Shown one piece after another: positions 26,444 through 48,950 of a DNA stretch of 64,000 nt (position 1 is its first letter; every line of letters starts with the position of its first letter). A program made the position numbers and the translations under genes. The notes beneath the pieces were generated by a model, which was not told the DNA's origin, made no database searches, and was given only the letters and a program-made list of their open reading frames with translations. The DNA comes from Mytilus edulis (lineage: Eukaryota), in NCBI RefSeq assembly GCF_963676685.1, contig NC_092345.1, forward strand, positions 69,502,001 through 69,566,000. Reading direction: 5' to 3'.

Positions 26444-26678
26444 ATGTCTGAGGACGAAACAAAAAACCCTTTAATTGTTGGAATAGATAATTTCTTTCAA
26501 TTTCCTTTGCGTGTCCGAATGACAACAGCAATAATTCCAGTAGGACTTATTTTCCTCATCGGTGGATTGGGTAGTCCGTCGTGGTCAAGGTCAGAATTGT
26601 CTCAACTTGGACTGTGGAAATATTGTGTATTTTCTGACATATTTACTTGCTGTGATAATTTACCGGGCGGGTCACCAG
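26444..26678 (+). CDS. Exon 1 of claudin-PARP gene: TM1 and first extracellular loop
   Basis: ATG at 26444, MSEDET...PSWSRSELSQLGLWKYCVFSDIFTCCDNLPGGSP, donor CCAG|GTAAGG. Confidence 0.85.
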
Positions 26679-29600
26679 GTAAGGCTGATAGAAAGTTTAT
26701 TTTATTTTATCTGTTTAAACGTGACTGTTGAAAAGGTATATTTTGCACAAACTTAATGGATTTATTCGCGCAAATGTGAAAAATTTCCATTATCTATTTC
26801 ACTATATTCTATATACAAAAAATAAAATATTGAAATAATCGTTTAGAATCTTCAAAGTTTTGTACAATGCAATTCGCTTATATCTTCAATAATCAGATAA
26901 ACCATACAATATAAAAAAGAAGATGTGGTATGTTTGCCAATGAGACAACTCTACACAAGAGACCAAAATGACACCAAAAGTATCAACTATAGGTCACCGT
27001 ACGGCCTTCAACAATTAGCAAAGCCCATACCGTAGTGAGCTATATAAGGCCCCGAAATGACGATGTAAAACGATTCAGATGAGAAAACTAATGCCCGCGT
27101 CACACTCCCGATTTTTACGCCGATGGCAACACGATTATGAAAATTTTCAAAATCGGGACTGATCGTATCCAGATCGGGCTATTCGTAGTGCCATCTTTAA
27201 CCATCGTAGAACCATCGGCCACTTTTTCTAGCCTTCGGGGACAACTTCGGGAAGGGTTCTAAATTTTTTAACATGTTAAAAAATCCCCGAAGGTGCATCC
27301 GATGTTGAGGGTTCGTATGTGAGTTCGTATCACCATCCTCACCATCGTAATGTCACCGGAAATGCATCTTTGAACATCGTATTGCATTCGTGTTTCCATC
27401 GTTTCCATCGGGCAGTTTTGGCATAACGATGTCTACACGAATGAATCACGAAGCTACCCGAAGGTCTTACGATGGCAACACGACTTCGTGAAGACCTCGT
27501 AATCCCGTCGTGATGCCATCGAATAAAAGTACGAAGGTGAAAAGATGGATTTACGACGGCAATAAATCCAGCTAAATGTAAGTTAATTTTCGCGCTTTAA
27601 TACATTTAAAGTGCCATGCGCGATATGCACTGGTCAGTCTAATACGACAGTTAAGAAAGACGTTCACAAAACATGGAGCTCATATCATATGATTCTATGA
27701 GAACAAGAAAGGCGACAGCGTTGTTTCTATTAATTCAAATGGAACAAGAAGAGCAGGTATTACAGGCTCGGGATTTACTTTTACAAATAAAATATTATTT
27801 TTTGTCAATTTTTCATATCAAATAACATAATGAAAATCATAAACGCGCCTCGTATACCAACACTGCAGGTACACGTATATAGGGAAACCAACTTTTTCTT
27901 CATTATTCTGATTTTTTATGTATCGTCTGAGATGTTGTCACACGAATGTTTACTCCATAAACATTTTGTTTTCTATATGTCATATTTTGCAGCATTTGTT
28001 GCTTTCCCCACATCCTTCCTTTAGTCTATATTATTATGATATTCTCCTGGAAAGAGCTGTTTTTGAATAAACCCATTACCTTACCTTTAAGATAGATCAG
28101 TAAACATGGGCATAATTGTGGGTGATTATTCAGACTAGTGCACACATTTTACAGTTCAAACAAGGCAATGCCGAGCGTGGCATCCCCTCGTATGTAACAT
28201 ATTGGGGACAAATATGGACACTATATTTGTATATGACACATGCAGAAAATGGTAAATTGAATACGCATATTTGATACATAAACTATTTTTTTTAGAAATC
28301 AACCAAATTATTCAGTAACTGGAAAGACCCACGGTCTTCCGTCTTATGATTAAACCAAAAATTAAATGTACAATATAATATATATTCAAAATTGATCAAA
28401 CAATTTAAAACGCGTGATGCCTCCGGCATGTAATTTAATGCATCGTAAGCTGTACAGACATCGTATATATATGGCCATCGTGCCATCATCGCAATCCATC
28501 GTGTAGCCTTCGTGATCAATCTTGTAGGCTTCGGCTGAGATATGAAGCTTAAATACCGTCTTCGGTTAACCTTCGTATGTCCATCTTTTGTTATCGTATA
28601 TACTTTCGGTACCCTCGTATAGACTTCGTTATTCATCGTACTTGCTTCGGTCACTTTTTGGTATTTTAACGAGATCGGGACTAACTTCGTACGAACTTAC
28701 AATTTTCGCATTCGGGTGTCCATCGTATATAAAAATCGGGACAGTGTGACGCGGGCATTCGGACTAATTAACACAAAACACGAAAAACAATTATGTGACA
28801 CATAAACAAACGACAACCACTGAATTACAGGCTCCTGACTTGGGACAGGCACATACATACAGAATATGGCGGGGGTAAAACCTTGATCAACGATCAACTT
28901 TTTTTAAAAAGGGACGTTTTAACCTACCCAAGTCTTATTAAGTGTTTCCTAACGCAGGAGATCAGTTTGCTCCTCTGTATTTGGCTCTGTTTCGTCATCA
29001 GGAACTACACGTGTGCTACTTTTAGTGTTAAAGGTATATTCAGTGTCAAAGTTACAAGTCATTGGGTGGTCTGTCCAATGCTTTTCTAGACGGTGTAATA
29101 CATTTTTGCAGTCACTACGATGTGTGTTAGGCTATTCCACACTTCCACTACTCGGTTAGTAAAGAGTATTATTAGTAAAATAGTGTGCTAGTGACCTAAT
29201 ACGGTATATATGGAGTTTACTGACCACATATATTCCGTATTACGTCACTAGCACACTATTATGACTATAACGAATTTATCTTACCGATTATCTTAACGTG
29301 TAAAATTTAGACTTGTGATCTATCAAAATGAGCAAGCCAGTCTTCAAAACTATTAGCATTAAGAAACTGCTACCATTGGTCCTACAAGGCCAACGATAAC
29401 AACTTGTTAGGTTTAAATGTGTTTAATGAACTTATTTCAATCTTAATCATCAATTTCTTCGTCTGTTGAAACTTTAAGATATTTTTCTCAGTTCCGTTTT
29501 GTTTTTATAATGAGACTTAGCACCACTACTAACCGTGTATGAAATAAGCCCCGCCTCCCTACTAGCCTAATATCAAATATACACGGTCTTCGCGCGGACA

Positions 29601-32505
29601 CTTTTAACCAATCACATTCCTAGAAATGTATAACCCCGTGAATTCCGGCATACGTCCGTGAACTTCGGCACGGGTTACATTAAAGTCTGTAGGTCTATAA
29701 TCGACACTATGGCTGCTTTAAACGCAAGACCGTATAAAAATATATACAAATTTATTAACACAAGTTTACAGTTCGAAAGCTAGGGGAAGACTGCCCCAGC
29801 AACAGTTTACAAATTATAAATTAATTCAAAGATAAGGGTATTAAAACATGAAAAGGTTCGTATAAAATATAAATATACATGTCCAATGTTATGTAATAAT
29901 AATAGGATAATTGTCCTCCGGCTAAACTTTATAAAATAGCGATACATGTATTATCTCTCACACTCTTGACAGCCATCGGATTAAGTTGTAAAATAGTAAA
30001 TCTATAATCTCTTTGGATATTTGAAATAAGAAACATTATGTTTAAGAATGAAACAAGAAATATTCAGCTAAAACTAAAAGGAGAAATATTCAATTTAAAA
30101 CTAAAACGAGAGTTCATAGAAATATCAAATCTTAAACGAGAGTTCATATCAATATTCAATCTAAATTGGGAGTTCATATAAAGCACTTTTCGAATTATGG
30201 TAAAAGTTTCCAACGTCACTTTTCTTCCGGTTATAAATGTATAGGAGGTAAGATAATATCTTATGTCTAATCTGTCTCTATTTCTAACCAATATTATTGA
30301 GTTGCCTCTTGTTGTCGAGCTTGTATTACGAATGAATAAACCTTATGTATACTCGAGTCATATACCCCTGTTGTTAATTTGTAGGTTCCTATCAATTCGC
30401 CTCTTAGCCTTCTCAGTTTTAAAGTAGGAATTTCATAATTTCAATGGTTCTTTGTATGACTGATTCTTGAGGTTGGGTAACATTGTTGTTGCTCTACGTT
30501 GTACATTTACAATTATCTCGATAGCTTTCTTTCTGTGTGGGTTTCATACAGTACTATCATATTCAAGATGAGGACGGGCTAATGCCTGACATAGTAGACA
30601 GAAGCTTTTATAGTATAGATATTTAGAAGTTCTTCTAATAATTCAAACTAGTTTTTGCTTTGTTGACTTGTGTCTGTATATGTTACTCCTACATCTTTCT
30701 CTGATTGAACTGTTTCTAGTGTGATTTCAGATCCGTCGTATGTCGACATTTAATACGTGCTTTCTTGCACATAATTGTAATTGGTAGAAAAGTTTCAATT
30801 TCGCTATGTAAAGATCTATACAGTGTCGAATCATCTGCAAATATGCATTTTATTCTACTTATGGAAGAAAACATTGATTAGTTATAAAGACTTCGAGAAT
30901 GCTAAGACATTGTTAACGTCAACGGACACAAATAAATTGAATTAGTACAGTATTAATTTATTTAATTGGGGAGAAATGTGCTTATTAACAATAGCACATG
31001 CTAAATGCTTAGTACGAATCAAGTTGCGAATTCATGTTTTAAATGGCAATTTACTCAGTGCTTTTAAATATAGTAATCTAATTTTGTACACTGTAAAAAT
31101 CGTGATTAGAAATTAAACACATGTATTACATGTTTATTTCTAATCGTGTTTAGGATTGTATTTAATATCTAACCAAATGTTTAAGTGAGAACATTAAATG
31201 TGAAAATGTTTTGAATTTGAACACTTTTAAAAGTGTTTTCTATTCTCAAAAAATCCTAAACACAATCATAAACACAACCTAAATATGTTTAGAAGAGGGA
31301 CAAAAGATACCAGAGGAACAGTCAAACTCATACTGAAAACGCCATGGCTAAATATTTAAAAAAAAATAAAGAAGTAAAACTGCTACACGTTTAGATCAAA
31401 ACGTGAAGACCTAAAAGTAAAAAAAAAATGTACAAAAGTTTTGTTTTGAACTATGTTTATATTCTAAATACTATTTTTTACAATATTTATACAGATTTGC
31501 CTTTAAAAGCTGATTTTTGCAGGATGGGTAAAAGCAACAATAGTATTTCATATCTTTGGGATGTTCGGAGGAGCTGTTTGTCTGTTATTTACCATATTTA
31601 CAATGTGTGTCTCGAATTTCAAGTTTCACACTAGAGTCCATCACGCCATTTGGATAAGCAGTGCACTTACAGGTATTATTAAAATTTATTTTATCGCATA
31701 TGTTTGTGGACATTGATTGGTATCGCGTCATTCAACACATTAGACCGAAAACATATACAAGAGGGTTTTTCTACGATTAAACATCTTTAATTATATATCG
31801 TGCAATTGATTTTCTGAAACTCAATGGATGCCCTCATTAACGAATAAATAAATGTACCGGAAGAGAATATATGCGTCAATGCAAATCGTGTATCAAAACA
31901 AAACAAAATCACATGAAAAACGTATTTACAGTCGCGATTTAACCTAAGCTTTTTAAACTTTTATAACCAACAAGTGCATACATATACAGAATATACGTAC
32001 ACAATAGATATAAAAGCATAAAAATCACACACCATATATTTCAAGCGCAGTAAGGCATAGCTAAATAAGGTAAACGCAAAAATACACATCGAATGCATGC
32101 ATGAATTAGGATTGAACACTTAGCTTAAATAGTTTCATAAAACAGGAAATGAATAAAACAAAGACGAAGGAAAACTACTGGACTTTCATTTCCAGACGGA
32201 CAGAATCAGGGTGCATCGAAAACGTTAGCGTATTCTGTTGTGTATTCATTATATATAGCCGCCATAAAATCCAGACAAAAACGTGTCAAGAAAGGAAAAA
32301 ATAAATTTTCATAGCAAACCACTTTCCTGGTATTTTAGAATCCAAAAACCGTTAACCCTAACCCTAACCTAAAAGAGTTATACCCGTAGCCAGGGGGGGG
32401 GGGTTCGGGGGGTTCGTCCGAACCCCCTTGAAATCAAATAAGCACTATTTAAGTCAACCTTTTGTTCAAATTGTGACTGTTAAAGTCGAGTACATGAGTC
32501 CAACG

Positions 32506-32536
<31 letters not shown>

Positions 32537-35500
32537 TGGAAATTCCTGGCTACGGGCCTGAGAGTGTTTTCCTGTGTTGAAGATTGTTTGTTTGTTTGTG
32601 TTCAAATAATTTTGATATACGTTGCACATCAGTGTCCTTAATAACGTTCATAAAAATTAAAAGTTGGAGTCATACAGAAACACACAAGCAACCATCTCTT
32701 TGTTTAAATGATTCGTAAAGAAAACCTTTATATATTAATGCTAAAAAACATATCTTTCTTAAAATGTTGCAGTTTTTTGTCTTGCAATTAGTGTGGGGAT
32801 ATTCAGTGCAAACTACCACAAAGAATCCTGGTTGAGCGGACATTACACATCTGCTGGTTTTCATATTACTGTCTGTGCATGTGTTGTATTTTTAGCTATA
32901 TGTGTAGCTATGCTTATTTTTAGTTTTCAGGGTAAGTACTCATCAGTTAATATACACTTGTTTATAACATACTCGTTTTAATAAATGTATGAACGTATTT
33001 CAATCATATGAAAACTATTATACAGTAGTCAGTACCAGTCATTGACTTGTTTTGAGTACACATCAACATATATATATATACATGCCGAAATTGTTTGGAT
33101 TTAAAGTTTTTGTTCTCCCGCATCGGCTTTCGAACCCGTGCGTCTGTGACATCGTGGTAACACCTTCTGCAACAGGTACAGCACATCAGACCACTCGACC
33201 ACCACATAAATATAACGCTTTCGGTGTTCGATGTAAAGTCTTTCCTAGATGGTTTTATCTAAGGTTGTTCCCAATACATGATGTATCGTGGCACGACGAT
33301 TGTTTTCATTCTAGATCAAGATGAAAGGCCGTCCGGGATGAAGTTTGATGAAATTTAGACTGCCATTGGAAATTATGGTATTTGGATAGGGACGGAAATT
33401 AAACTTGCAATAGACAACCTACGGACCCCTCTAAGAGTTGTTGCAAGTGTGGCACCCTCCTTTCACGAGACATCGACTTTAACATCCCAATTCTAACCGG
33501 ACCTTGCTCTTTACGTGTACATCCCACACGGACAGACGGACGCCCACACGGTCCGTCATAGAATTCTCATATGTTTCATACACTTCTTTTCCATTACTAG
33601 TACTATTACTTATAATTTTTAATTTTGTGTAAGAATACGAAGATTCACCTGTTATATTGTACTTTGTAAAAAAAACACTCTATCATAAGTAGAGATGGCT
33701 GCCGTCCTTTACATCCAAAGACACCAAAAGGTAGAAAGTAGTTCATATAAGTATATATAAAGATATAACTAATGAACATATATTTAGACGAAAACTGCTA
33801 TGATATTCCTATTGATGTCATATTTTTATTCAGAATCTTCACTGATCCTCTGACTCGGCATCATTCCAGTGAATGTTTTTTCCGATCACTACAACTTTTA
33901 TACAGATAAAGTCGTTGTTGTTGTGGTCCGACTGTTTGAAGTGTTAGACATGGTTTTCAAAGAAAATATTAGAATGAATTCTTCAGATATAATAAAAAAT
34001 ATTTTTTAACTTCGACCCACATATCAGTCTAAAGATGTGAACAACGATTCTAAAATAAGTTATTTTTATACGAACATTATGTTATAAACTCATAAAATAT
34101 TTCGCCTCAACAAATGGGTTTCTTTAGTCACAATATTTTTCCTGCATGTAACAATAAACGTACAATGTGAATCATTTATGTGTAAGTGAATGAGCGTACT
34201 CTCAGTCCAAACAACCCGTACAGAAACACCCCAATGGCCACTAGAGTGAAATCAACAAGACAATCATTATCTTCCAGTAATCAAACAGTCGGACCACAAC
34301 TACAATGACTTTAACTGTATAAAAGTTGTAGTGATCGGAGGAAACATGATTCAACATGTAATAATAAAAAAGTATAGAATTCTTAAGTTAAAAGAATTAA
34401 AAAGATTTTTTGATTAAGGACCAACATCAAACAATATGGTATTAAAAAAGGGTATTTTGAATTTTAGACCACAACAGAGTGCAAGACATTTCTAATTACA
34501 TGACACCAATCAACTGGACAAAATACAATCAAGATAGAAGTTTAGAAGCTTGGCTTTCACATATTGATCCTAAATTGGACAAAATAGAAATCAACGAAGC
34601 ATCAACGAGAGAAAAAGACGCAATAGTGCAATTGATAAGTCGTACATGGAAACCTCATTTGGCTGGCAAAGGTCGTGACGCGCAACAAAGAGGATATTCG
34701 CAAATGAAAGTAGTTAAGGTAGAAAGAATAGAAAATCCATCTCTTTTCCTGAAGTATGCTCAGAATAGACACGATTTACTTCGTCGTCTTGACACTACAA
34801 ATCGACCATTTAAATTCCCTGGAATGACACAACATGGACCAATCGAAACAACTGTAAACATGAACAAGAATGTATTTGCAGATATATATCCTGAAATAAA
34901 TGAGCATTATTTGTTCCATGGTACCTCAGATGCTACAGTCACAGCTATTGCTTATGGTGGCCTAGATGCACGTTTAGCAGGCGATGGTATGTTTGGGCGA
35001 GGAATTTATGCGGCAGAATGTCCAACGAAGAGTGACCATTATACAGGTTATATTTTATTTTTCTCGTTTGAATTGTTTAACATTCGTAATTTCGGGGTCT
35101 ATTTAGGCTATTGTAGTTTGTTTTGCGGTATGGGGTTTCTCATTGTTAATGCCGTACGGTTACTTATAGTTCCTTACTTCTTGTGTCTTAAGTAGAGATT
35201 TGTCTCATTGGCAATCATACCACATATTCCTAGAGTCTAGACATAGATACAAGTATCTTGTCTTGGGAAGGGATAAATCATACCTTGTAAAGAATCACTC
35301 TGATTCAAACAAAAAATTCTCTGAAACTGAAATTATCAAGATGCTTGATTTTGACAACATAGTTGTTACGATTGGAGGACGTATTTTTCAACAGACTGTC
35401 GGATTTCCAATGGGAACCAATTCTGCCCGTCTTCTTGCCGACTTGTTTCTTTATTATTATGAGGCTGACTTCATTTAGTAACTTTTTGGAAAAAAGATAA

Positions 35501-38500
35501 GCAGTTGGCAATATCCTTTAATTTTACGTTCCGCTATATAGATGATGTTCTCTCACTGAATAATACAAAATTTGGTGACTATGTTAAACGAATCTATCCC
35601 ATCGAACTAGAGACAAAGAATACTACAAATACAGTTAAGTCTGCTTCATATCTTGACTTGCATCTAAAAATTGATAATGACGGTCGGTTGAAAACAAAAC
35701 TTTACGACAAAAGAGATGATTTCAGCGTCCCAATTGTGAACTTTCCATTTTTATGTAGTAACATCCATCAGCGCCTGCATACGGAGTACATAGTTTCCAA
35801 ATTGATACGATATTACCGGCTTGTATTTTCTATCATGATTTCCTTGATAGAGGATTGCTGCTCACAAGGAAGCTATTAAACCAAGAGTTCCAAATGGTGA
35901 AGTTGAAATCATCCCTTCGTAAATTTTACGGACGCCATCACGAGTTGGTTGACTGTTATGAAATAATCGTTTTACAGATGATATCGGATATGTTCCTTAT
36001 GTCGTAACTACAATACCCTTCCCTTTTCACGAATGTGACCCACCGAATAAAACTATTTGCTGGATTTGTTTTTTTTTTTTTTTTTAACAACATTATATAT
36101 TTATTCATCAAATATGCTTGTTACATTGTTACACCAAGAAACCAAGCTTTTCTTAATGCATCCTGTAATATTCCACCGATTGCCCAGGTTAGCAATCAGC
36201 TGCTGGTATATATGTATATATTATAATAATATGTATAAATTTCTTGAAATACAATTATACAACATTTTAATACATTATGTTTTATTCTATCAATCGTCTA
36301 AACTTCTTTTTAGTGACTTTAGTAATGGATTAAGTTTCATTGTTCTGTTTTCGTTGTATCTTTTTATGTATTCTCGAACAAAAATTTGATAAACATTTAC
36401 CTTTGTCAATTTCTGATTAGATACATAATATGATTTGTATATGGAAAAACCTAAGATTGTTAGGAAATAATTCAGACCAAAATAATTTTTGTCAAAAATT
36501 TTATATCCAAAGACTAATTGCTTTAATGATACTCTATAATTTAAATTTGATTTTATCATTAACTCATGAATACTTTTCCAAAAATTTTCTAAAAATCGAC
36601 AAGAAATAAAAAAGTGGTTGTAATCTTCTTCTTCGTTACATACATTACATAGATTGTCATTCGTCTGTTTAAACAATAATTGTTTTGTTGGTAATATGAA
36701 TTGTAAAAATTTCCATCTATATATTTTTAACTTATTTTCTTCTAAATAATGAAACATGAAAACATATAGTTGGTTAATACTAAGGTTTTCATTAGTTTGT
36801 AAAATACGCATCCATTTGCTAACACCAATTGATGGTTCAGTTTTATCTTTACAAATTGACTTATATAATATATTTGTTGAAAAATTTGAAGCCTCAATGT
36901 AATTACCTTTCCAGATTAGTTTCTGTCTAGGAATATTTACAATACTTTTAATAGAACTCTCAGACTGTAACATCTGAAGCCAGTCTTTTGGAATGGCTTT
37001 TTTTTAAATATTTATTTCTGCAATCCAATTACTCTTGCATTCTAATTTATCCAAAATAAAATGTTGAGATATATTGCCAGTGTCGTCTATAATATCATTG
37101 ACAAATATCAAGTTACTCTTAATCCAATTTTCAAAAATAATAGTTTTATTTTTAAAATTAATCTGTTTGTTCCCCCAAATTACCTGTTTCCTTACTTCTG
37201 TGAAGTTGGTAGGTTTTTTTGTTTGTCCACCGCCTGATATTACCCAACATTTAAATACTTCTCTATAAAATTCAGGGATATGTTTGATATAGTCCAGAAT
37301 TTTCTTCTTTTCAAAATTCATCTTAAAAATTAATCAATTAATACCAACCACGCTGAGATATTTTAATGGAATCAACTTCCAGTTTGAAATATCATTACTA
37401 ATGAGTTTACTTACCCAAGATGCTTTTAGAGACATAAAATAACTTTGTATGTCGATCATTTGTAACCCCCCTTCTTCGTTTGACTTTATCATGGTATTTC
37501 TTTTAACCTTATCTGGTTTACCATCCCAGATGTATTTATAACATTTACTTTCTATTTCTTTTCTGAATTTCTCCGGAACTGTACAGGCACTTGCCAAAAA
37601 TGTAAAAAGTGGTAAAACTAATGTTTTTATAATAAGAATTTTCCCGATTAAAGTTAAATTACGTTTCCCCCATGAATGAAATAGTTTATTCATTTTCTCA
37701 ATTTTATCCTCCCAGTTTAATTTTTCACATTCTTCTCTGTTATGACCAAAATATATTCCCAATGCTTTGACTGGTTTGTTTGTCCAATTAATCTCAGCTA
37801 CCTTATCTTTACTATTTTTCAGTTTTCCTATCCATATACCCTCTGTTTTATTTTTATTCAAAGTTAACCCAGAAAATGATCCAAAAATTTCTATTTCATT
37901 CATAGCAGCTTTGATTTCTTTCTTATTACTGAGAAATAAAGTAGTATCATCCGATAATTGTGAAATTTTAATTCTATGATTTTTATTATCTAGTTTAACT
38001 ACGAACCCTTTGATATCTCTGTTTTTTTCGAAGTCTTAAAGCCATGATCTCCACGGATAAAACGAAAAGAAGAGCTGATAAGGGACACCCCTGCCTTATT
38101 CCTCTTGAGTTATGAAATATTTCTGAAATCCATCCATTATTAATAACACAAGTTTGTAACCCAGTATATAATGTTTTTACCCAGTTTATAAAAGATTCAT
38201 TAAATCAAAAATGTTTCAAAGTGATTAACATAAAATCCTATTCTAAAGAATCAAAAGCTTTATTAAAATCTACAAAAACTATTGCCCCTTCAATCGAATA
38301 TGCATCCGCATAATCAATAATATCTTGAATTTGTCTCAAATTAAAACCAATAAATCTGTTTTTAATATATCCTGTTTGATCTTCATTAATAATTTTTGGT
38401 AGTATCTTTTTTAAACGTTGCGCTAGAACAAATGACAATAGTTTTAAATCTACATTTAGTAAGGAAATTGGCCTATAATTATCTAATAATAAATGATCCC

Positions 38501-41500
38501 CCTTTTTGAATAATAATGTCAAAATACTAGTACGTTGTGAGTGCGATAGACTTCCTTTTTCATTACCAGTGTTTAAAACTTTGACTAGAAAATATCTTAT
38601 TTTTTCCCAAAACATCTGATAAAATTCAACTGTTAGACCATCTAGCCCTGGTGCTTTATTTAATTTCATTGTATTAATAGCTGAAGTACATTCTTCAATT
38701 GTTACTTCTCCGTCACAAACTGATTTGTCAACATTATTTGAATTATTTTCTAATTCAGTTTCACAAATATAATTTTCGACTAAATCTTTTTTTTGACATT
38801 TAGAACTGTACAGTTTTTCATAGTATTGTTTAATTTTTGTTAATAAATCGGCCTGGTCTGTTGTTATATTTCCATTCTCGTCACTTAGTTTATTTATCGA
38901 CTTTTTTATCTGTCTTTGTTTTTCTAAACCTAAAAAATATGCATTATTTTTTTCCTCATATTCAACCCATTTCTCCCTTGACCTAACCTGTGCGCCTCTA
39001 GCTTTCTGTTCGTATATCTTACCTATTTTTAGTTCTAAATCTTTTATTTCTTCGTCTAAATATGCATCTTCCTGTGGTAATGCATCTCTTAACTTATTTT
39101 TCTCTTCCAGGTTTTTTTTCTAGTTCCCGACTTAATTCTCTGTTTGCCTTTGCTTTATTCTTACAATATGCTATGCTTACCTCCCTTATTTCTACTTTTA
39201 AAACGTCCCACAATAATTGACAATCGATATTATTATTTCCATTAGTATATTTATGAATAAGATTACTGATTATCTCTTTGTATTTTTCCTCTTTTAAAAT
39301 AGAGTTGTTAATCTTCCAATATCCCTTACCTCTTTCTGACACACCAGTCCTAATACTTAAGAAAACGCTTTGATGATCAGTAGAATTAATTACAGCTGGT
39401 TTAATTTTACAATTTTCTACTAATGACTTAAAATCTGAGCCAATTAGTATCATGTCTATTCTACTTGCCTGAGTTTTATCTCTCCTCCGCCATGTATATT
39501 GTTCAACGTTTGGATTCAAACATCTCCAGATATCGATTAGTTTGTTTGATTTTAACATTAATTTCAAACTATTTACTGGTTTTGAAATCTGGCTATTTGG
39601 TCGTGTTGTTTTTCTATCTATAACATGTAAAGTATCATTGAAATCTCCCCCAATAATCGGTATACCGATACCAAATTCTTTTATATTATCACTTACCTTT
39701 TTAAAAAAACGTATTTCTAGATGCTTTATAATTTGGTGCATATATACATACCAACGTAAATATTGTTTCGTCAATTTGTATATTGAGCAGAATTTCTCTC
39801 CCGTCAGCGTCTCGATTTTCATTAATAACAGTAACATTTAAACTACTCCTAATTAAAATAGCGACCCCCCTACTTGCTGTCGTGCCATGACTACAGAATA
39901 TATTAAAATCTTTCTGTATCGACATTTCTTTACTTACTTTTTCGTCAAAATGCGTTTCTTGCAAAAAGGCAATGTCACATTTATGAGCTTTTAACCATTC
40001 GATAACCCTCTCTCTTTTATTCCTATTGTTTATACCATTTACATTGAGACTACATACATTTATTAATTTTTTTTTAACCATATTGTGTTATCTAATTCAA
40101 TTTTCAAACATGTTACATAAATAAAAATACTACACTGTGAAATATATACAATACTTCTACATAGAAGTATCTCTTGTTTTCTTTTCAACATAAACATTAT
40201 AAACAATAACAGAATACTACAATTAAAATGTGTTTTGAATCCGGCATGCGAATTACCACTAGATTTAACGATGTGATACATAGCCTTGTCTGTATGTTTA
40301 CCTATCCGTGACCTTATTAATCTATTTAAATTCATGTTGAAGATAAGTTGGCCCTCTGGGCACGTGTTTTTGTTGTGTATTTTAAATAGTATCACGACTA
40401 GAAATGTTATGATTATCATAAATAATAACTGTAAAACTGACGTTTCTAATTTGAATATTAATTCATATATATTATGTGTATTGAAATTTCGACACCTTTG
40501 TGCGTATAAGTATCCTAAAAGTGTTCGACTATCAGCGTTAAAGTGGATGTTTTTGTAGCGTATTTTTGCATTTGGATTTAACACGAAACATGTCGACAAA
40601 TAAGCGATATAAGGTATTTCAATATCTTTTGACAAACAAGTGAAAATTTGTAATTGGAAGCTGGATTTGTAATAACATAAGCAACACGACGGGTGCCACA
40701 TATGGAGCAGGATCTGCTTACCCTTCCGGATCCCATTAGATCACCCCTAGTTTTGATGGGGTTCGTGTTGCTTAGTTTTTAGTTTTCTATGTTTTGTATT
40801 CTGAACTTTTATTTGTGTGTATGTCTTTTTCATTTTTAGTCATGGCGTTGTCAGCTTATTTTAAATCTATGAATTTGACTGTCCCTCTGGTATCTTTCGT
40901 CCCTCTTTCCTATTTTCACATATTTAGATATCAACGAAAAAATATGTTCCATGTCATTTTATTTAATTTCTAACACAAATCCTATCTGTTTGTCATCATT
41001 TAGATCAGAGCCTATAGATATGCAAAATTTTATGCATTTTTCAAAATACGTTTGTACCTTGAGCGACTGATATCCACCTTTTTAATTTCGATGACCGTCA
41101 TGCTCCGATCGGTTATCGATAGGACGATTATACTTCTATCAAAATTTTGAACTGACTGTAATGAATGATACTTGTATAAAAGTTGGAACGTATATATTTA
41201 CCTATTGTATTAATATTTTTAATATTTTGTAGGTACAGCTATGTCTAACCTTAAAATGATTGTTGTACGCATGCTCCTAGGTGAAATTTATGTTACCAAT
41301 GTTGCATACCCATTCCAAAGACCACCCTGCAAACAATGTATACCTGGTAATATTGATAAGTGTAACAATTCGGCTCATAAACATGACATGTTTGACTCTG
41401 TCATGGCGGCTCTTGATGGAAAGCATAGAGAATTCATAACTTATGAACAAAACAGATGTTCTAGTTATCCAGAATATATAATAACTTATAACAGAGAATG

Positions 41501-41501
41501 A
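26444..41501 (+). CDS. Claudin/PMP22-like tetraspan protein fused to a PARP (ARTD) catalytic domain; 5 exons: 26444-26678, 31523-31672, 32773-32931, 34468-35046, 41233-41501 (463 aa)
   Basis: Exons of 235+150+159+579+269 = 1392 nt give one open frame through four GT-AG phase-1 introns. The N-terminal part has four hydrophobic segments and a W-x9-GLW-x2-C-x7-CC loop motif. The C-terminal part has LFHGT, MFGRGIYAAE, KSDHY, REFITYE and YPEYIITY. Confidence 0.8.
27091..28758. mobile_element. TIR element (PIF/Harbinger-like, tentative) inserted in a dispersed repeat in intron 1
   Basis: TIR ATGCCCGCGTCACACT(GT)CCCGATTTTTA at both ends. It splits a repeat whose intact form is at 3870-4140. The TSD is imperfect. 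Confidence 0.7.
30240..30870 (-). mobile_element. Decayed CR1/L2-type LINE RT fragment
   Basis: Minus-strand remnants FADDS, ALARPHLEY, VQRRAT. Confidence 0.65.
31523..31672 (+). CDS. Exon 2 of claudin-PARP gene: TM2 and start of TM3 (this frame is not in the ORF track)
   Basis: TTTTTGCAG| acceptor; GWVKATIVFHIFGMFGGAVCLLFTIFTMCVSNFKFHTRVHHAIWISSALT; ACAG|GTATTA donor. 150 nt, homologous to and the same length as the exon at 425-574. Confidence 0.85.
32383..32560. mobile_element. Small GC-rich MITE with poly-G and poly-C tracts
   Basis: CCCGTAGCCAGG...CCTGGCTACGGG inverted ends. Confidence 0.65.
32773..32931 (+). CDS. Exon 3 of claudin-PARP gene: end of TM3, second extracellular loop, TM4
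   Basis: TGTTGCAG| acceptor; VFCLAISVGIFSANYHKESWLSGHYTSAGFHITVCACVVFLAICVAMLIFSFQ; CAGG|GTAAGT donor. Confidence 0.85.
33873..34347. mobile_element. ~470-bp MITE with ~65-bp TIRs in intron 3
   Basis: TCCGATCACTACAACTTTTATACAG...GTGGTCCGACTGTTTGA is inverted at 34281-34339. Confidence 0.7.
34468..35046 (+). CDS. Exon 4 of claudin-PARP gene: linker and N-terminal part of PARP catalytic domain
   Basis: ATTTTAG| acceptor in phase with exon 3; KVERIENPSL, NEHYLFHGT, GMFGRGIYAAECPTKSDHYT; donor ACAG|GTTATA. Confidence 0.88.
35245..40908 (+). mobile_element. Penelope-like RT fragment split by the LINE (35245-36069 and 40671-40908)
   Basis: QQTVGFPMGTN, FRYIDDVL, YLDLHL, TKLYDKRDDF; frameshifted. 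Confidence 0.75.
36070..40659 (-). mobile_element. L1/Tx1-clade LINE, 5'-truncated, ORF2 (APE endonuclease + RT) disrupted
   Basis: SLNVNGI, FLQETH, GGDFN, SRID and STDH (EN); KAPGLDG, NYRPISLLN, KAFDSLE* and QLSDDTT (RT); C-x2-C...H-x4-C tail. Poly-A (T17 at 36069-36085) and TSD GCTGGATTTGT at 36059-36069 and 40660-40670. Confidence 0.93.
41233..41501 (+). CDS. Exon 5 (terminal) of claudin-PARP gene: C-terminal part of PARP domain with catalytic Glu
   Basis: TTTTGTAG| acceptor; MIVVRMLLG, RPPCKQC, FDSV, REFITYE, SYPEYIITY, stop TGA. Confidence 0.88.
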
Positions 41502-43387: not shown

Positions 43388-44869
43388 TGACTTTACGTCG
43401 GCACATCGCAAATAGACCGTGACTTATTTAAGGAATGACTGTATTATTGTTTCTGTCTATTCGAAATAACATAAATTCATTTCTTATAATTTAATTCTAA
43501 ATTCTATTTTAAACCGTAGAAAACCATGAAAAAACGTTGACGACGTCACGGTCACATGACTTAATTATGTCTTTGGGCTGATAACAAAATAACGTCAGCC
43601 AATCATTACTTATTCATGACTTTTTTTACATAAATTGTCATCCTGCCTTTTAAACTTAAACTCCTACCCTGCCTTTTTTCTACTTCTATCGAAGCTCCCC
43701 TCCTCCACCCTATAAAAAAAAACTTCTATGCGACCGGTATTTTTGCCGAAATTCGTGAAAACTTTTTGTCTATTACGATTTCATACGGATTTTCCTTCGA
43801 TCGAAATTTTTTACACATGCCCATTAGCGCGTCTGGCGTAAATATAAATTTGTTATCCTGGTATCTATGATGAGTTTATTATTAGTTAGATCTAGGGTTA
43901 AAGAAAATGGATTTGCTTTCAAATAAGTTTTTTGTTGGTCCGATAAAAATTCAACTTCTTGATAAAAACAATACTTTCCTGAAAAAAACCCATTAAGATC
44001 TGCACCAATACAGTTTTTCGTATTAGATCTACAAAACGTACTGTATTCTTGAAAACAGTCGACCACCTTTTTGTATAAAACCGTAGATACTTTTATTTCT
44101 TTTAAGTTGGTTAAAATGTTTTATTATTTTGTCGCCCTTCAAACAATTAGACACCCTGTTTAAGTATTACTTGTTCCTTTCTGATTAATTATTGTTAAAT
44201 TTGTACAACTAAACTACATCTTTTTTCGTTCGAAAAACACATCAACCCAAGATTCTCTGCATATACAATAATCGAATTGTGGAATATTCGTATATTAACA
44301 CTGTTACGGAATAAAAAGGATTTAATGCCTTCATTTACCTTATGTAATCAGTAGTTGCATTGACAGATGATGGTAAAGATTTGACGAAGGTGAACACCAG
44401 GCAATTTAAGGGTTACCGATATGTTGATGCAGCCGCCATTCCACGAACGCCTTAATCGGCAAAGGAGCGACATATCTAAAAAGCCATTTATCTTAGTGAG
44501 CAAACTATTCAAACTGATGGACCAAACTTGGAATTCCTTGGATCGCATGCAAGTTCTAGAGATTAAAGATCATCGAACAGAACATTCACTGGAATAACGT
44601 GTGTGCCATATTGTCAATTTCAGACGATCCGGTACCTATTATGTTTGCTTGTTGCTTGTTCTCTTTAAACTCTAGTGATATGTACATATATTATAAGACC
44701 CTATACATACACTAATATATATCTTATATATATTCGTAAATGATGTTTCTTGTCTAGTCCACAATTGTTTTTTTTTATGCCGGAGGTCATGGTGAATCTT
44801 GAACATTTATTATTCATTTGACTTTCCTTCACCAGCCGAGATTTTATTAACGAAAAATAATTTAATTTT

Positions 44870-47800
44870 GCATCAACGAGAGAAAAAGACGCAATAGTGC
44901 AATTGATTAGTCGTACATGGAAACCATATTTGGCTGGCAAAGGTCGTGACGCGCAACAAAGGGGATATTCACAAATGAAAGTAGCCAAGGTCGAAAGAAA
45001 AGAAAATACATCTCTTTTCCTGAAGTATACTCAGAATAGACACGATTTACTTCGTCGTCTTGAAACTACAAATCGACCATTTAAATTCCCTGGAATGACA
45101 AAACATGGACCAATCGAAACAACGGCAAACATGAACAAGAATGTCTTTGCAGATAAATATCCTGAAATAAATGAACATTATTTGTTCCATGGTACTTCAG
45201 ATGCTACAGTCAGAGCTATTGCTTATGGTGGCCTAGATACACTTTTAGCAGGCGATGGTATGTATGGGCGAGGAATTTATGCGGCAGAATGTCCAACGAA
45301 GAGTGACCATTATACAGGTTATATTTTATTTTTCTCGTTTGAATTGTTTAACATTCGTAATTTCGGGGTCTATTTAGGCTATTATAGTTTGTTTTGCGGT
45401 ATGGGGTTTCTCATTGTTAATGCCGTACGGTTACTTATAGTTCCTTACTTCTTGTGTCTTAAGTAGAGAGTTGTCTCATTTGCAATCATACCACATATTC
45501 CTAGAGTCTAGACATAGATACAAGTATCTTGTCTTGGGAAGGGATAAATCATACCTTGTAAAGAATCACTCTGATTCAAACAAAAAATTCTCTGAAACTG
45601 AAATTATCAAGATGCTTGATTCTGACAACATATTTGTTACGTTTGGAGGACGTATTTTTCAACAGACTGTCGGAATTCCAATGGGAACCAATTCTGCCCG
45701 TCTTCTTGCCGACTTGTTTCTTTATTATTATGAGACTGACTTTATTTAGTAACTTTTAGGAAAAAAGATAAGCAGATGGCAATATCCTTTAATTTTACGT
45801 TCCGCTATATAGATGATGTTCTCTCACTGAATAATACAAACTTTGGTGACTATGTTGAACGAATCTATCCCATCGAACTAGAGATAAAGGATACTACAAA
45901 TACAGTTAAGTCTGCTTCATATCTTGACTTGCATCTAAAAATTGATAATGAGGGTCGGTTGAAAACAAAACTTTACGACAAAAGAGATGATTTCAGCGTC
46001 CCAATTGTGAACTTTCCATTTCTATGTAGTAACATTTCATCAGCGCCTGCATACGGAGTATATAGTTTCCAAATTGATACGATATTACCGGGCTTGTATT
46101 TTCTATCATGATTTCCTTGATAGAGGATTGCTGCTCACAAGGAAGCTATTAAACCAAGAGTTCCAAATGGTGAAGTTGAAATCATTCCTTCGTAAATTTT
46201 ACGGACGGCATCACGAGTTGGTTGACTGTTATGAAAAATCGTTTTACAGATGATATCGGATATGTTCCTTATGTCGTAACTACAATACCCTTCCCTCTTC
46301 ACGAATGTGACCCACCGAATAAAACTATTTGCTGGATTTGTAATAACATAAGCAACACGACGGGTGCCACATATGGAGCAGGATCTGCGTACCCCCCCCG
46401 GATCCCATTAGATCACCCCTAGTTTTGGTGGAGTTCGTGTTGCTTAGTTTTTAGTTTTCTACGTTGTGTATTCTGAACTTTTATTTGTGTGTTTGTCTCT
46501 GCCATGGCGTTGTCAGCTTATTTTAAATCTATGAGTTTGACTGTCCCTCTGGTATCTTTCGTCCCTCTTTCCTATTTTCACATATTTAGATATCAACGAA
46601 AAAATATGTTCCATGTCATTTTTTTCTTCTTACACAAATCCTATCTGTTTGTCATCATTTAGACCAGAGCCTATAGATATGCAAAATTTTATGCATTTTT
46701 CAAAATACGTTCGTACCTGTTACAGTCAGGCATTTTATATATTGACTAATTTTTGGATGCAATTTACAAACTGCATAGAAAAATTTATAAAAATGAAACG
46801 TTCACAAATCTGAACTATTGAAATTATCGAACAACGGAACAGTTTTGCTTCTGTTTGAATTTTGATTTTTCAAAAATTTCAATTGTTTAAAAAACAGTAT
46901 AACAAAAATGCTCAAAGACAAGATCAAAGGGGAAATCTATAAAAACTGAAAACATCAAACGCTGTCAATGAACTGAACAAGTCACGGGAAAACAACTGCC
47001 GGATAATCCTGACTTGGGACAGAGATTTTTATAACTACCTAAGCCTCCCTCCCACTTGTATAACAATTGTGTATAGTTCCGTTATGTTGACAGACATAGG
47101 TAAGTCACACAAACAGACATGATAGGTATAAATGTATCACAAATAGAGAATTCTAATATGACGTGCTTCTTTCGCTTTGTGAATAAACCCATGCTATAAA
47201 TCTAATAAAATTTGTTTGCACATGCGTATATTGACTACTGCAAAAATAATAAATTTTATCAAATTGTCATGCATTTTATATATTTCCTTAATTTAACACT
47301 TCCAAACTCTTAAATGATGCACATGTTGTTACTAATTCATTAGTTATTACTGTAATGTGTTGCATTTGGAAATTGACATATTTTATATGACAACCGTTCA
47401 TGCTGGCTTTTCAAACACCTCCATCTGAAAAATCACATTGCCAGTCGTTTGCTGGTTTACAAACAAAAAAGGGAGGTTCATGGAAGAGCATACACAAACA
47501 CGCTACACTTATAACAATCTGACATATAAATTGCCCTAATTGTCCTAATCAGAATCGAAATAATTGATCCAAGCTAATACTTTATTGTAGTTTTAACATG
47601 GGTAGGCATTATATTCGTGTTATTTTAGCCCTCACTATCGCTCGGCCAAAAATAATCACGAATATAAGGCCTACCCAAGTTAAAACAACAATAAAGTATA
47701 GCTTGCATCAATTATTCCTTAACTAGCAACCAGAACTATGTAAACATACAAGGCAACTGACTATAAAAATTTCAAACAAACATACAAATCAACGGTGTGT

Positions 47801-48950
47801 GAATGTTTCCAGCAACGCGTCACGCGGAGGAAAAACAATTATCTAAGCTACATGTAGTTCTAAAATCTGAAAGAACCTTCTTGGTGCCTGTAAGTTTAGA
47901 ACTTGCTGAATTCTAAACTTGCTGAAACGAGTTAAGAACTTTTTGAGGTACCTTGCTGATGGGAATAAATGAAATGAAGATGAACAACTTCTGTCGTGCT
48001 TCTAATTGTCAATCAAAACAAATACCCATTATCTTCCCTACTTGTATTTTTAAACATAGTAAATTTTTTAATTTGCTAGATTTGTTCATAAACAAAATGA
48101 AAAATAAAATTGGCACTGGCCCTTTTTTTTGAAAATGTTTTTTCTGACCAATTCATTTCATTAAATCATTTAATCCTGATATAATAAAATTTAGTACTGA
48201 TTTTTGACAAGTGTTACATTCATACGTACCATCATCAGGTTGTTGTTACATTCATACGTACCATCATCAGGTTGTCTGCAAATTGATATTATACAATTAA
48301 AGCCTTTGTATGAGGTCCGATATAGCATAATATTGACCTCAACCAAAGGCCATAACTGTTATTTCATTAATCAACAACTATATCATGAACAATGCAAATT
48401 TAGAATTTTCTAGAATATATTTGTTGTAACAAGCTACACGTATATATTGTGAAATGTACTGTTTTTAGTAATTTTTGGTTCATTTGGATAAATCTTCTTT
48501 CTTTCATGTAATTTGAGGGACTGATATCCACCTTTTTAATTTCGATGACCGTCATGCTCCGATCGGTTAGCGATAGAACGATTATACTTCTATCAAATTT
48601 TTTAAACTGACTGTAATGAATGATATAAAAGTTTGAACGGATATATTTACTCATTGCATTAATATGTTCAATATTTTGTAGGTACAGCTATGTCTAACCT
48701 TAAAATGATTGTGGTACGCATGCTCCTAGGTGAAATTTATGTTACCAATGTTGCATACCCATTCCAAAGACCACCCTGCAAACAGTGTATACCTGGTAAT
48801 ATTGATACGTGTAACAATTCGGCTCATAAACAGGACATGTTTGACTCTGTCATGGCGGCTCTTGATGGAAAGCATAGAGAATTCATAACTTATGAACAAA
48901 ACAGATGTTCTAGTTATCCAGAATATATAATAACTTATAAAAGAGAATGA
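44870..48950 (+). pseudogene. Tandem duplicate of PARP exon 4 (5'-truncated, 44870-45317) and exon 5 (48682-48950)
   Basis: Homology starts abruptly at 44870, equivalent to 34599 in mid-exon, with no acceptor or upstream exons. Substitutions include ERIENP>ERKENT, DARL>DTLL and MFG>MYG. Confidence 0.8.
45516..46570 (+). mobile_element. Penelope-like RT fragment, uninterrupted duplicate copy
   Basis: GIPMGTN, FRYIDDVL, SNISSAPAYGVY. Carries the empty LINE target site at 46331-46341. Confidence 0.78.

What the first reader, a model, noticed from the sequence alone, without database searches (positions are those of the whole stretch)
26444..41501. Intact claudin-like tetraspan-PARP fusion gene: candidate membrane-embedded ADP-ribosyltransferase
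Seen: three exons encoding a complete claudin/PMP22/EMP-type four-TM domain splice in frame to two PARP exons (exon 3 CAG G|GT to AG|AC gives ...IFSFQ-DHNRVQD...), producing 463 aa with no stop. Established: claudin-superfamily C-termini are cytosolic, and the known membrane ARTs are tail-anchored PARP16 or GPI-anchored ecto-ARTs. I know of no characterised claudin-PARP architecture. Inference: a receptor-like or junctional enzyme coupling extracellular loops to cytosolic NAD+-dependent ADP-ribosylation, possibly in epithelial or haemocyte defence. The ORF track hides it because the exons are short and spread over 15 kb of TE-filled introns.
Basis: partly seen in the sequence, partly recalled or inferred. 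Interest (0 to 1): 0.92.

Follow-up and report, generated by a model that had tools for sequence, protein, structure and literature searches.

The report
Claudin-fold membrane protein fused to PARP
This mussel gene really does encode one protein with a four-helix claudin-type membrane domain joined to an apparently intact ADP-ribosyltransferase (PARP) domain; it is spliced as one mRNA and is also found in oysters, but it is already an annotated "uncharacterized protein" and nobody has tested what it does.

Summary
Five exons on the + strand (26444-26678, 31523-31672, 32773-32931, 34468-35046, 41233-41501) have GT..AG borders and phase-1 introns. Their translations match the 463-aa RefSeq model XP_071156776.1 (Mytilus edulis, "uncharacterized protein") exactly.

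- **The splice is real.** The 32931->34468 junction appears in spliced contigs from two runs (two organism codes, two studies) and in 3 raw RNA-seq reads.
- **The architecture is conserved.** An intact neighbouring paralogue (~45% identity) has the same exon order and phases, with only ~235 nt between the tetraspan exon and the PARP exon. Transcript-sized contigs and an oyster RefSeq model show the same two-domain layout.
- **The N-terminal half has the claudin/PMP22/MP20 fold.** Evidence: the W-GLW-C-CC loop, VIA Z 15.8, a profile hit to claudin-18 at E 9e-7, and Pfam PF00822 above threshold in a sibling protein.
- **The C-terminal half is a complete PARP catalytic domain.** It scores Z 20.9 to tankyrase-2 and keeps an invariant H-Y-E triad. 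It starts about 10 residues after the fourth membrane helix.

The most likely reading is a polytopic membrane protein that holds a cytosolic ADP-ribosyltransferase against the membrane. Activity, targets, location and any role in defence are untested. I found no paper on this architecture. It is a new variant of a known kind, of moderate to high interest.

The parts
26444..26678 (+). Exon 1. It holds the start codon, a short cytosolic N-terminus, TM1 and most of extracellular loop 1 with the W47...G56-L57-W58..C61...C69-C70 signature.
   Evidence: The signature residues are invariant across the mussel and oyster homologues.
31523..31672 (+). Exon 2. It holds TM2, a short K/R/H-containing loop predicted to be cytosolic, and the start of TM3.
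   Evidence: The e2->e3 joint (31672->32773) is seen in an X1 contig, and the X1 loose end before 31520 reads the end of exon 1.
32773..32931 (+). Exon 3. It holds the rest of TM3, extracellular loop 2 (NY.KE.WL) and TM4. Its donor is AGG|GTAAGT, phase 1.
34468..35046 (+). Exon 4. It holds a linker of about 10 residues and then the N-terminal two thirds of the PARP catalytic domain, including H332-G-T, G-I-Y362-A-A-E, S370 and Y373.
   Evidence: Pfam PF00644 at E 3.7e-10, tankyrase hits, and the splice to exon 3 seen in RNA-derived data.
41233..41501 (+). Exon 5. It holds the C-terminal third of the PARP domain: the C407-x2-C410-x7-C418-x4-H423 loop, the catalytic-position E441, the YPEYIITY end and the stop at 41499-41501.
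   Evidence: The X1 loose end behind 35048 reads the start of this type of exon.
6418..6688 (-). Paralogue A, exon 1, divergently oriented to the focal gene. Paralogue A exon 2 is at 425-574 (-). Exons 3-5 lie left of the window in L019, at about 4992-4832, 4587-3931 and 2794-2520 (-).
   Evidence: It has the same five exons, all phase 1 and all open, at about 45% amino-acid identity. The e3-e4 intron is about 235 nt.
425..574 (-). Paralogue A, exon 2. It is 150 nt, the same length as the focal exon 2.
44861..45317 (+). A 5'-truncated duplicate of exon 4 (e4'), 90% identical over residues 41-192. The homologous first 40 codons and the acceptor are lost, and there is a stop just upstream.
   Evidence: It is part of RefSeq XP_071156777.1, 'PARP12-like', 203 aa (P0168).
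48682..48950 (+). Second copy of the terminal exon (e5'), 96.6% identical. The acceptor, frame and stop are intact.
57449..57717 (+). Third copy of the terminal exon (e5''), 75% identical. The acceptor, frame and stop are intact, and the Cys-rich loop has diverged.
   Evidence: It is 94.6% identical to the C-terminus of M. galloprovincialis isoform X2 (P0001).

Best explanation
The stretch is one five-exon gene of Mytilus edulis, identical to RefSeq XP_071156776.1. Its 463-aa product is a polytopic membrane protein.

Residues ~22-181 form a claudin/PMP22/MP20-type four-helix domain with two extracellular loops. Residues ~192-463 form a complete PARP catalytic domain. That domain belongs to an invertebrate clade that keeps the H-Y-E triad and is closest to the catalytic domains of tankyrase, PARP12 and PARP15.

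Shown here:
- the exons are spliced into one mRNA;
- the architecture is kept in an old neighbouring paralogue, in M. galloprovincialis and in oyster-type homologues;
- both folds are supported;
- all NAD+-site residues are invariant.

Inferred:
- As in other claudin-fold proteins, both termini face the cytosol, so the PARP domain sits about 10 residues below TM4 at the inner face of a membrane.
- There it would use cytosolic NAD+ to ADP-ribosylate itself or membrane-proximal targets. Whether it adds one unit or chains is open.
- The extracellular loops would supply localisation, or cis/trans contacts, that place or regulate the enzyme.
- A defence or stress-signalling role is a guess. It rests on the tandem duplication and divergence of the locus and on the many receptor-like fusions of the same PARP clade.
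For: - **Gene structure.** Exon translations, GT..AG borders, phase 1 throughout, and exact identity to P0172.
- **Splicing.** The 32931->34468 joint is seen in contigs of X1 and X3 (two organism codes, two studies) and in 3 raw RNA-seq reads of X24. The e2->e3 joint and loose ends matching e1 and e5 are also seen. Intron 3 has no depth. The word share of X1-X4 (0.23-0.26) equals the exon share of the stretch.
- **Conservation.** Paralogue A has the same exons and phases, a 235-nt e3-e4 intron, and no Met in its exon 4 before the catalytic His. P0152 is 473 aa on a 1828-nt contig. The P0096 cluster is 459 aa on 1.8-2.8-kb contigs. P0181 and P0183 are full length, and P0184 is from Saccostrea cucullata.
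- **Claudin fold.** Four hydrophobic segments, a K/R-rich short loop 2, and N-x-S/T sites in loop 1 of the oyster forms. The W-GLW-C-CC residues are invariant. Atlas neighbours are all from the PMP22_Claudin clan. The family profile hits claudin-18 at E 8.9e-7. PF00822 scores 41.5 bits against a 26.7 cut-off in P0152. Foldseek gives E 2e-5 to Cav gamma-1, claudin-3 and claudin-15. VIA gives Z 15.8 to MP20 and 15.7 to claudin-15, 160-163 residues aligned at rmsd 3.0.
- **PARP domain.** PF00644 hits. The second AF2 model has pLDDT 85-98 over residues 190-463. It scores Z 20.9 to tankyrase-2 and 20.8 to PARP15. H332, G333, Y362, E365, K369, Y373 and E441 are invariant in 57 homologues. E441 aligns with the Glu of tankyrase AEYVIY and with the Ile of PARP12.
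Against: - No enzyme assay, localisation or topology experiment exists.
- The window protein itself does not reach any Pfam claudin-clan threshold. The assignment rests on the sibling protein, the family profile and the predicted fold.
- The transmembrane part of the AF2 models is only of middling confidence (pLDDT 55-83).
- An H-Y-E triad does not guarantee activity or chain elongation. From general knowledge, PARP3 and PARP4 carry H-Y-E but act as mono-transferases.
- Raw-read support for the key joint is thin (3 reads, one start). The better-supported contigs come from runs whose RNA status is only guessed, although a GT..AG-bounded skip of 1536 nt is hard to explain otherwise.
- Nothing here bears on tissue, induction or defence.
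Confidence: 0.8

Rival explanations
1. These are two neighbouring genes, a stand-alone tetraspan and a stand-alone PARP, joined only on paper by the reader and by gene prediction.
For: A PARP-only model does exist 3 kb downstream (P0168, 203 aa). Unspliced, exon 3 would run into a stop after 18 more codons.
Against: Spliced contigs and raw reads cross 32931->34468, and intron 3 has no depth. Paralogue A leaves only about 235 nt between the two parts, and its exon 4 has no Met before the catalytic His. Contigs of 1.8-2.8 kb from other runs encode both domains in one frame.
Confidence: 0.03
2. The PARP domain is catalytically silent and serves as a binding or scaffold module, in the manner of PARP13/ZAP or TASOR, attached to a membrane adhesion protein.
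For: Inactive PARP-like domains are common, and several appear among the fold matches (PARP13 Z 17.6, TASOR pseudo-PARP Z 15.3). There is no activity data for any member of this clade.
Against: H332, Y362, E441, S370 and Y373 are all kept across 57 homologues. Of 72 complete representatives, 70 have Glu at the triad position. From general knowledge, silent PARP domains usually lose these residues.
Confidence: 0.12
3. It is a cell-junction component: a septate-junction claudin relative that ADP-ribosylates junctional plaque proteins. On this view it is not a sensor or defence protein.
For: It has the claudin fold and the conserved loop-1 Cys and Trp signature. From general knowledge, invertebrate claudin relatives do work in septate junctions.
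Against: The nearest feature-space neighbours are PMP22/EMP/PERP/LHFPL/TMEM37-type clusters rather than classic claudins. There is no C-terminal PDZ-binding tail. The family evolves fast: neighbouring paralogues are only 45% identical, and the locus carries truncated duplicates and pseudo-exons. That is unlike core junction genes. No localisation data exist.
Confidence: 0.15

Closest known systems
Tankyrase-1/2 (PARP5a/b) catalytic domain
   Same: It is the best sequence-profile and fold match (E 9e-29; Z 20.9, rmsd 2.1, 190 residues, 26% identity). It has the same H-Y-E triad and the same ...E-[FY]-[IV]-x-Y...YPEY[IL]ITY ending.
   Different: There are no ankyrin repeats and no SAM domain. 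The tankyrase zinc-binding insert is missing, and a different C-x2-C...C...H insert lies elsewhere. The protein is attached to a four-helix membrane domain.
PARP12 / PARP15 / PARP14 / PARP10 (mono-ADP-ribosyltransferases)
   Same: The profile and fold scores are about equal to those for tankyrase (PARP12 E 1.3e-19; PARP15 Z 20.8 with 187 of 192 residues aligned). The catalytic domain starts with the same 'P-x-x-W' N-terminal subdomain. Mussel and oyster macro-domain 'PARP14/15-like' proteins carry the same PARP clade.
   Different: Those human enzymes have Ile or Leu at the third triad position, where this family has Glu. This protein has no zinc-finger, WWE or macro domains.
PARP16 (tail-anchored ER membrane PARP)
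   Same: From general knowledge, it is the only characterised PARP-family enzyme that is an integral membrane protein with a cytosolic catalytic domain.
   Different: PARP16 has a single C-terminal anchor helix, whereas this protein has an N-terminal four-helix claudin-fold domain. The fold match is much weaker (Z 11.9). From general knowledge, PARP16 has an H-Y-Y triad.
Claudin / PMP22 / EMP / MP20 / TARP / LHFPL tetraspan superfamily
   Same: It has four helices, a loop-1 beta-sheet with the W-GLW-C-C signature, and the same fold (Z 14-16; Foldseek TM-score to target 0.60-0.75). PF00822 passes threshold in the sibling P0152.
   Different: I know of no characterised member that carries an enzyme domain. 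The usual short cytosolic tail and PDZ motif are replaced by a PARP domain of about 270 residues.

Membership tests
PARP catalytic domain family (Pfam PF00644, ARTD) | Sequence match to PF00644 above the curated threshold | tested here: met
   Exon 4 alone scores 40.1 bits against a 26.7 cut-off. The near-identical M. galloprovincialis orthologue P0001 scores 50.4 bits over its whole length, covering profile positions 21-184 of 199.
PARP catalytic domain family (Pfam PF00644, ARTD) | H-Y-[E/I/L] NAD+-site triad with the accompanying Gly, Ser and Tyr | tested here: met
   H332-G333, Y362, S370, Y373 and E441 are present. H332, G333, Y362, Y373 and E441 are invariant in 57 homologues. E441 aligns with the tankyrase Glu and the PARP12 Ile.
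PARP catalytic domain family (Pfam PF00644, ARTD) | ART fold of the whole domain | tested here: met
   The AF2 model has pLDDT 85-98 over residues 190-463. It scores Z 20.9 to tankyrase-2, 20.8 to PARP15 and 19.2 to PARP10.
PARP catalytic domain family (Pfam PF00644, ARTD) | NAD+-dependent ADP-ribosyl transfer | not testable with these tools
   This needs a biochemical assay.
Claudin / PMP22 / EMP / MP20 superfamily | Four transmembrane helices with a large first and a small second extracellular loop | tested here: met
   Four hydrophobic segments lie at 22-40, 85-103, 121-139 and 160-178, with loops of 44, 17 and 20 residues. The AF2 model shows helices plus loop-1 strands.
Claudin / PMP22 / EMP / MP20 superfamily | Loop-1 signature W...GLW..C...C | tested here: met
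   W47, G56-L57-W58, C61 and C69-C70 are invariant in the mussel and oyster homologues.
Claudin / PMP22 / EMP / MP20 superfamily | Match to a Pfam model of the clan (PF00822 or PF13903) above threshold | tested here: inconclusive
   The near-identical orthologue P0001 has no clan hit above threshold. The sibling P0152 passes PF00822 at 41.5 bits against 26.7. P0096 and P0183 have sub-threshold Claudin_2, TMEM37 and LHFPL hits. The family profile hits claudin-18 at E 8.9e-7.
Claudin / PMP22 / EMP / MP20 superfamily | Claudin fold | tested here: met
   Foldseek gives E 2e-5 to 5e-4 for Cav gamma-1, claudin-3, -15, -4, -19 and -9, TARP and MP20. In VIA, the top 11 rows are all claudin-fold proteins (Z 13.9-15.8), followed by a step down. 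Caveat: the transmembrane part of the model has pLDDT 55-83.
Classic tight-junction claudins | Short cytosolic tail ending in a PDZ-binding motif | tested here: not met
   The C-terminus is the PARP domain and ends ...ITYNRE. This protein should not be filed as a classic claudin.
Tankyrases | Ankyrin repeat clusters, a SAM domain and a zinc-binding insert in the catalytic domain | tested here: not met
   Pfam finds no Ank or SAM domain. The tankyrase insert aligns to a gap in the family profile.
PARP16-type tail-anchored PARPs | A single C-terminal transmembrane anchor after the catalytic domain | tested here: not met
   All hydrophobic segments are N-terminal, and none follows residue 178. 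The fold match to PARP16 is weak (Z 11.9).

The most novel reading that the evidence does not exclude
The claudin-fold tetraspan may be a swappable membrane module that bivalves couple, across phase-1 introns, to different cytosolic protein-modifying enzymes. Here it is coupled to a PARP. In a paralogue 8.9 Mb away it appears to be coupled to a RING E3 ligase. The H-Y-E PARP clade would then be a general intracellular effector domain of lophotrochozoan membrane receptors, since it also follows pentaxin-TIG-EGF, multi-TM and other ectodomain architectures. That would mean a membrane-proximal ADP-ribosylation signalling system for innate defence. The three alternative terminal exons at this locus would diversify the Cys-rich loop next to the active site.
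Probability: 0.25. Interest if true: 0.85.

Novelty: new variant of a known kind. Interest (0 to 1): 0.6.

Why it matters
From general knowledge, the characterised membrane ADP-ribosyltransferases are tail-anchored PARP16 and the extracellular GPI-anchored ARTCs. An enzyme built into a claudin-fold tetraspan would be a third way of placing ADP-ribosylation at a membrane. It would also be the first claudin-superfamily protein I know of with an enzyme domain.

The architecture is held in both mussels and oysters, with every catalytic residue intact. That argues for a selected function, and it gives a defined protein to test by auto-modification assays, localisation and search for partners.

It also fits a wider pattern seen in passing here. 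In lophotrochozoans the same PARP clade is attached to several receptor-like membrane architectures. This suggests ADP-ribosylation may be used there as a receptor output. No experiment yet supports that.

Tried and rejected
- **Joined model not built.** I did not build or search the joined spliced protein myself. Exons were searched one at a time by reference. Across junctions I read only the four single split codons, in a script. Whole-protein work used database proteins that the tools returned: P0172, which equals the model, and P0001.
The source organisms and contexts of the Logan proteins P0096, P0152, P0181 and P0183 could therefore not be read. I infer they are transcripts only from contig sizes of 1.7-2.8 kb.
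- **Search restricted to the membrane domain.** The search for homologous proteins with P0152 residues 1-160 found only the query itself. This says little, because the tool depends on shared words and has a length window.
- **Exon 5 alone against PDB sequences** gave no hit. The family profile was needed.
- **First AF2 model** (11 sequences) was poor for the PARP half (pLDDT below 50). The second (57 sequences) was good for PARP but weaker for the membrane half. Neither model shows reliably how the two domains sit relative to each other.
- **PARP-domain tree.** In the free tree the tetraspan-PARPs fall in three places, and P0152 groups with mussel macro-PARPs. The AU test does not reject one clade (p 0.32). 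A single origin is therefore neither shown nor excluded. A second AU test did not finish.
- **Literature.** Four searches found no paper on a claudin-PARP or polytopic PARP.
- **Earlier findings.** Look-ups by place and by several words were blank.
Full report
**1. What is in the sequence.**
Translated by reference they give 78, 49, 52, 192 and 88 codons without a stop. All four introns have GT..AG borders and are phase 1. The window has no N.

Exons were searched one by one by reference, and only the four split codons were read across junctions.

**2. It is an existing gene model.**
A full HMMER scan with exon 4 returned P0001, a 463-aa protein with the match at residues 183-374. Its cluster holds XP_071156776.1, "uncharacterized protein [Mytilus edulis]" (P0172). 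That protein lies on a contig of 108,102,362 bases, the same length as the window's contig C2. All five exon translations are exact substrings of P0172.

M. galloprovincialis LOC143064382 has two 463-aa isoforms with the same layout. Older M. edulis and M. galloprovincialis models carry automatic UniProt names of "Poly [ADP-ribose] polymerase". So the gene is not hidden from annotation. It is only uncharacterised.

**3. The tetraspan-PARP splice is real.**
I laid four runs on window 31300-35400. The joint 32930->34467 (equally 32931->34468) has GT..AG borders and skips 1536 nt. It appears in:
- an X1 contig (633 nt, depth 59);
- an X3 contig (960 nt, depth 17), which covers all of exon 3, all of exon 4 and about 200 further letters;
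- 3 raw reads of a declared RNA-seq run, X24.

X1 and X3 carry different organism codes and come from different studies. X1 also shows the e2->e3 joint, and its loose ends read the end of exon 1 and the start of an e5-type exon. Intron 3 has no depth apart from a repeat at 33355-33491. The word shares of X1-X4 (0.23-0.26) equal the exon fraction of the stretch, 888 of 3801.

One caveat: X1 and X3 are only guessed to be RNA, and the raw-read support is thin. A precise GT..AG skip in assembled contigs is still hard to explain otherwise.

**4. The architecture is conserved.**
- **Paralogue A.** The window's own genome holds a paralogue on the minus strand. Exons 1 and 2 lie at window 6688-6418 and 574-425, and exons 3-5 lie just left of the window in L019. 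It has the same five exons, all phase 1 and all open, at about 45% amino-acid identity. Only about 235 nt separate the tetraspan exon 3 from the PARP exon 4. Its exon 4 has no Met before the catalytic His, so it cannot start a stand-alone PARP.
- **Transcript-sized contigs.** P0152 (473 aa, 38% identical over 94% of the query, on a 1828-nt contig) resembles paralogue A.
- **Oyster-type homologues.** A second group has the same two domains: the P0096 cluster, P0181 and P0183 (459-490 aa, on contigs of 1.7-2.8 kb). Its nearest named relative is Saccostrea cucullata LOC134258807.

The layout is thus present in mussels and in oyster-type bivalves. On a PARP-domain tree the fusion proteins do not form one group, but an AU test does not reject one clade (p 0.32). 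A single origin is open.

**5. The N-terminal half is a claudin-fold tetraspan.**
- **Segments and loops.** Four hydrophobic segments lie at 22-40, 85-103, 121-139 and 160-178. They are separated by a 44-residue loop 1, a short basic loop 2 and a 20-residue loop 3.
- **Signature.** Loop 1 carries W47, G56-L57-W58, C61 and C69-C70, which are invariant between the mussel and oyster forms. The oyster forms also have N-x-S/T sites in loop 1.
- **Sequence evidence.** Language-model neighbours are all PMP22_Claudin-clan clusters: mollusc PMP22/EMP/MP20, PERP, LHFPL, EMP1 and TMEM37, at score 0.92. The family profile hits claudin-18 at E 8.9e-7. The sibling P0152 passes Pfam PF00822 at 41.5 bits against a 26.7 cut-off. 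The window protein's near-identical orthologue passes no clan model.
- **Fold evidence.** The transmembrane part of the first AF2 model has pLDDT 55-83. Foldseek matches it to Cav gamma-1, claudin-3 and claudin-15, TARPs and MP20 at E 2e-5 to 5e-4. VIA gives Z 15.8 to MP20 and 15.7 to claudin-15 (160-163 residues aligned, rmsd 3.0), with the top eleven rows all claudin-fold.

It is therefore a member of the wider claudin/PMP22 superfamily. It is not a classic claudin, because there is no short tail or PDZ motif.

**6. The C-terminal half is a complete PARP domain that looks active.**
- **Family and fold.** Pfam PF00644 is passed by exon 4 alone. With a 57-sequence alignment the AF2 model has pLDDT 85-98 over residues 190-463. 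It matches tankyrase-2 (Z 20.9, rmsd 2.1), PARP15 (Z 20.8, 187 of 192 residues) and PARP10.
- **Catalytic residues.** H332, G333, Y362, E365, K369, Y373, R440 and E441 are invariant in 57 homologues. E441 aligns with the Glu of the tankyrase AEYVIY motif and with the Ile of PARP12. Of 72 complete representatives of this clade, 70 have Glu at that position.
- **Zinc-type inserts.** The tankyrase zinc insert is absent. Instead a C407-x2-C410...C418...H423 loop is invariant in the fusion family and present in 30 of 72 relatives. It is probably a zinc site, but this is untested.
- **Distance from the membrane.** The PARP fold starts at about residue 192, roughly ten residues after TM4. The catalytic domain must therefore sit against the membrane.

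I confirmed both points here.

**7. How it most likely works.**
Shown: one mRNA, one polypeptide, two folds, intact NAD+-site residues, and conservation across two bivalve orders.

Inferred from what is established for claudin-fold proteins, and from the basic loop 2 and the loop-1 Cys and glycosylation sites: both termini are cytosolic. The PARP domain would then use cytosolic NAD+ at the inner face of a membrane to modify itself or nearby proteins. The extracellular loops would provide placement or contacts.

Still open:
- whether it makes single units or chains;
- which membrane it sits in;
- whether it acts in junctions or in defence.

**8. Comparison with what is known.**
- It works like a membrane-tethered PARP, and PARP16 is the only characterised precedent. 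It is not of that type, because PARP16 has a C-terminal single anchor and its fold match is weaker (Z 11.9).
- It is not a tankyrase, because it has no ankyrin repeats, SAM domain or tankyrase zinc insert.
- It is not an ecto-ART, because it has an H-Y-E site rather than an R-S-E site.

Four literature searches found no description of a claudin-PARP or polytopic PARP. [quoted passage not shown] That protein belongs to the same PARP clade (P0147).

**9. Context noticed.**
- **Locus structure.** The locus is a small, fast-changing cluster. It holds paralogue A, the focal gene, a 5'-truncated PARP-only duplicate (44861-45317 plus 48682-48950, RefSeq "PARP12-like", 203 aa), a pseudo-exon-1 with a stop (57093-56902, minus strand) and a third intact terminal exon (57449-57717). 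That third exon matches the C-terminus of M. galloprovincialis isoform X2 at 94.6%. Alternative terminal exons may therefore vary the Cys-rich loop.
- **Tetraspan-RING paralogue.** A further tetraspan paralogue lies at C2:78.39 Mb. Its introns are at homologous positions and in phase 1, but its last exon encodes a proline-rich linker and a RING finger (zf-C3HC4_3, E 7.5e-15) instead of PARP. There is no transcript evidence for it yet.
- **Other membrane architectures.** The same PARP clade also follows a signal peptide plus ectodomain plus 4-5 TM (P0083), a glycosylated multi-TM protein of Lingula (P0192), and a 3196-aa pentaxin-TIG-EGF-multi-TM protein (P0141).

**10. Verdict.**
The gene is already annotated but has not been studied. 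The architecture is a new variant of a known enzyme kind.

Noticed in passing
window 6688-6418 (-) and 574-425 (-); L019 about 4992-2520 (-): An intact paralogue sits divergently next to the focal gene. It is about 45% identical and has the same five-exon, all-phase-1 tetraspan-PARP structure. Its exon 3-exon 4 intron is only about 235 nt.
   Followed up: yes
window 44861-45317 and 48682-48950 (+): A partial tandem duplicate of the two PARP exons. It has lost the first 40 codons of exon 4 and has no tetraspan exons. It is modelled in RefSeq as a 203-aa 'PARP12-like' protein that would lack the N-terminal part of the PARP fold, so it may be a decaying copy.
   Followed up: partly
window 57449-57717 (+): A third, intact copy of the terminal exon lies 16 kb downstream, and its Cys-rich loop has diverged. 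It is 94.6% identical to the C-terminus of M. galloprovincialis isoform X2, which hints at alternative terminal exons that change the loop next to the active site.
   Followed up: partly
window 57093-56902 (-): A third copy of tetraspan exon 1 (44% identical), interrupted by a TAG. No matching downstream exons were found. It is a probable pseudo-exon.
   Followed up: no
L018 (G000:C2:78386001-78396000), about 4290-4535, 6051-6200, 7467-7626 and 8650-8942 (+): Another tetraspan paralogue has introns at the same positions, all phase 1. Its last exon encodes a proline-rich linker plus a RING finger (zf-C3HC4_3, E 7.5e-15) instead of PARP. This is a putative claudin-fold E3 ligase. It is a sequence-only model with no transcript evidence.
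   Followed up: partly
proteins P0083, P0192, P0141, P0147: The same H-Y-E PARP clade is fused to other membrane or receptor-like architectures: a signal peptide plus ectodomain plus 4-5 TM; a Lingula multi-TM protein; and a 3196-aa pentaxin-TIG-EGF-multi-TM protein. It is also fused to a Lingula caspase.
   Followed up: partly
window 36290-40081 (-): A non-LTR retrotransposon remnant lies in intron 4. Its endonuclease-type ORF (PF03372, weak) and reverse-transcriptase ORF (RVT_1, E 5e-11) are split into several pieces. This region also accounts for the low GC and strong skew at 36-40 kb.
   Followed up: partly
window 31300-31436, 32396-32532, 33355-33491, 35136-35272: These short intronic stretches have very high depth in all RNA runs, and many reads run on into unlike sequence. 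They are expressed repeat families, not part of this gene's mRNA.
   Followed up: no
PARP-domain tree: The PARP domain of P0152 (paralogue-A type) groups with the mussel macro-domain 'PARP14/15-like' proteins rather than with the focal gene's PARP. An AU test does not reject a single clade of all tetraspan-PARPs (p 0.32). Exon exchange between PARP genes is possible but not shown.
   Followed up: partly
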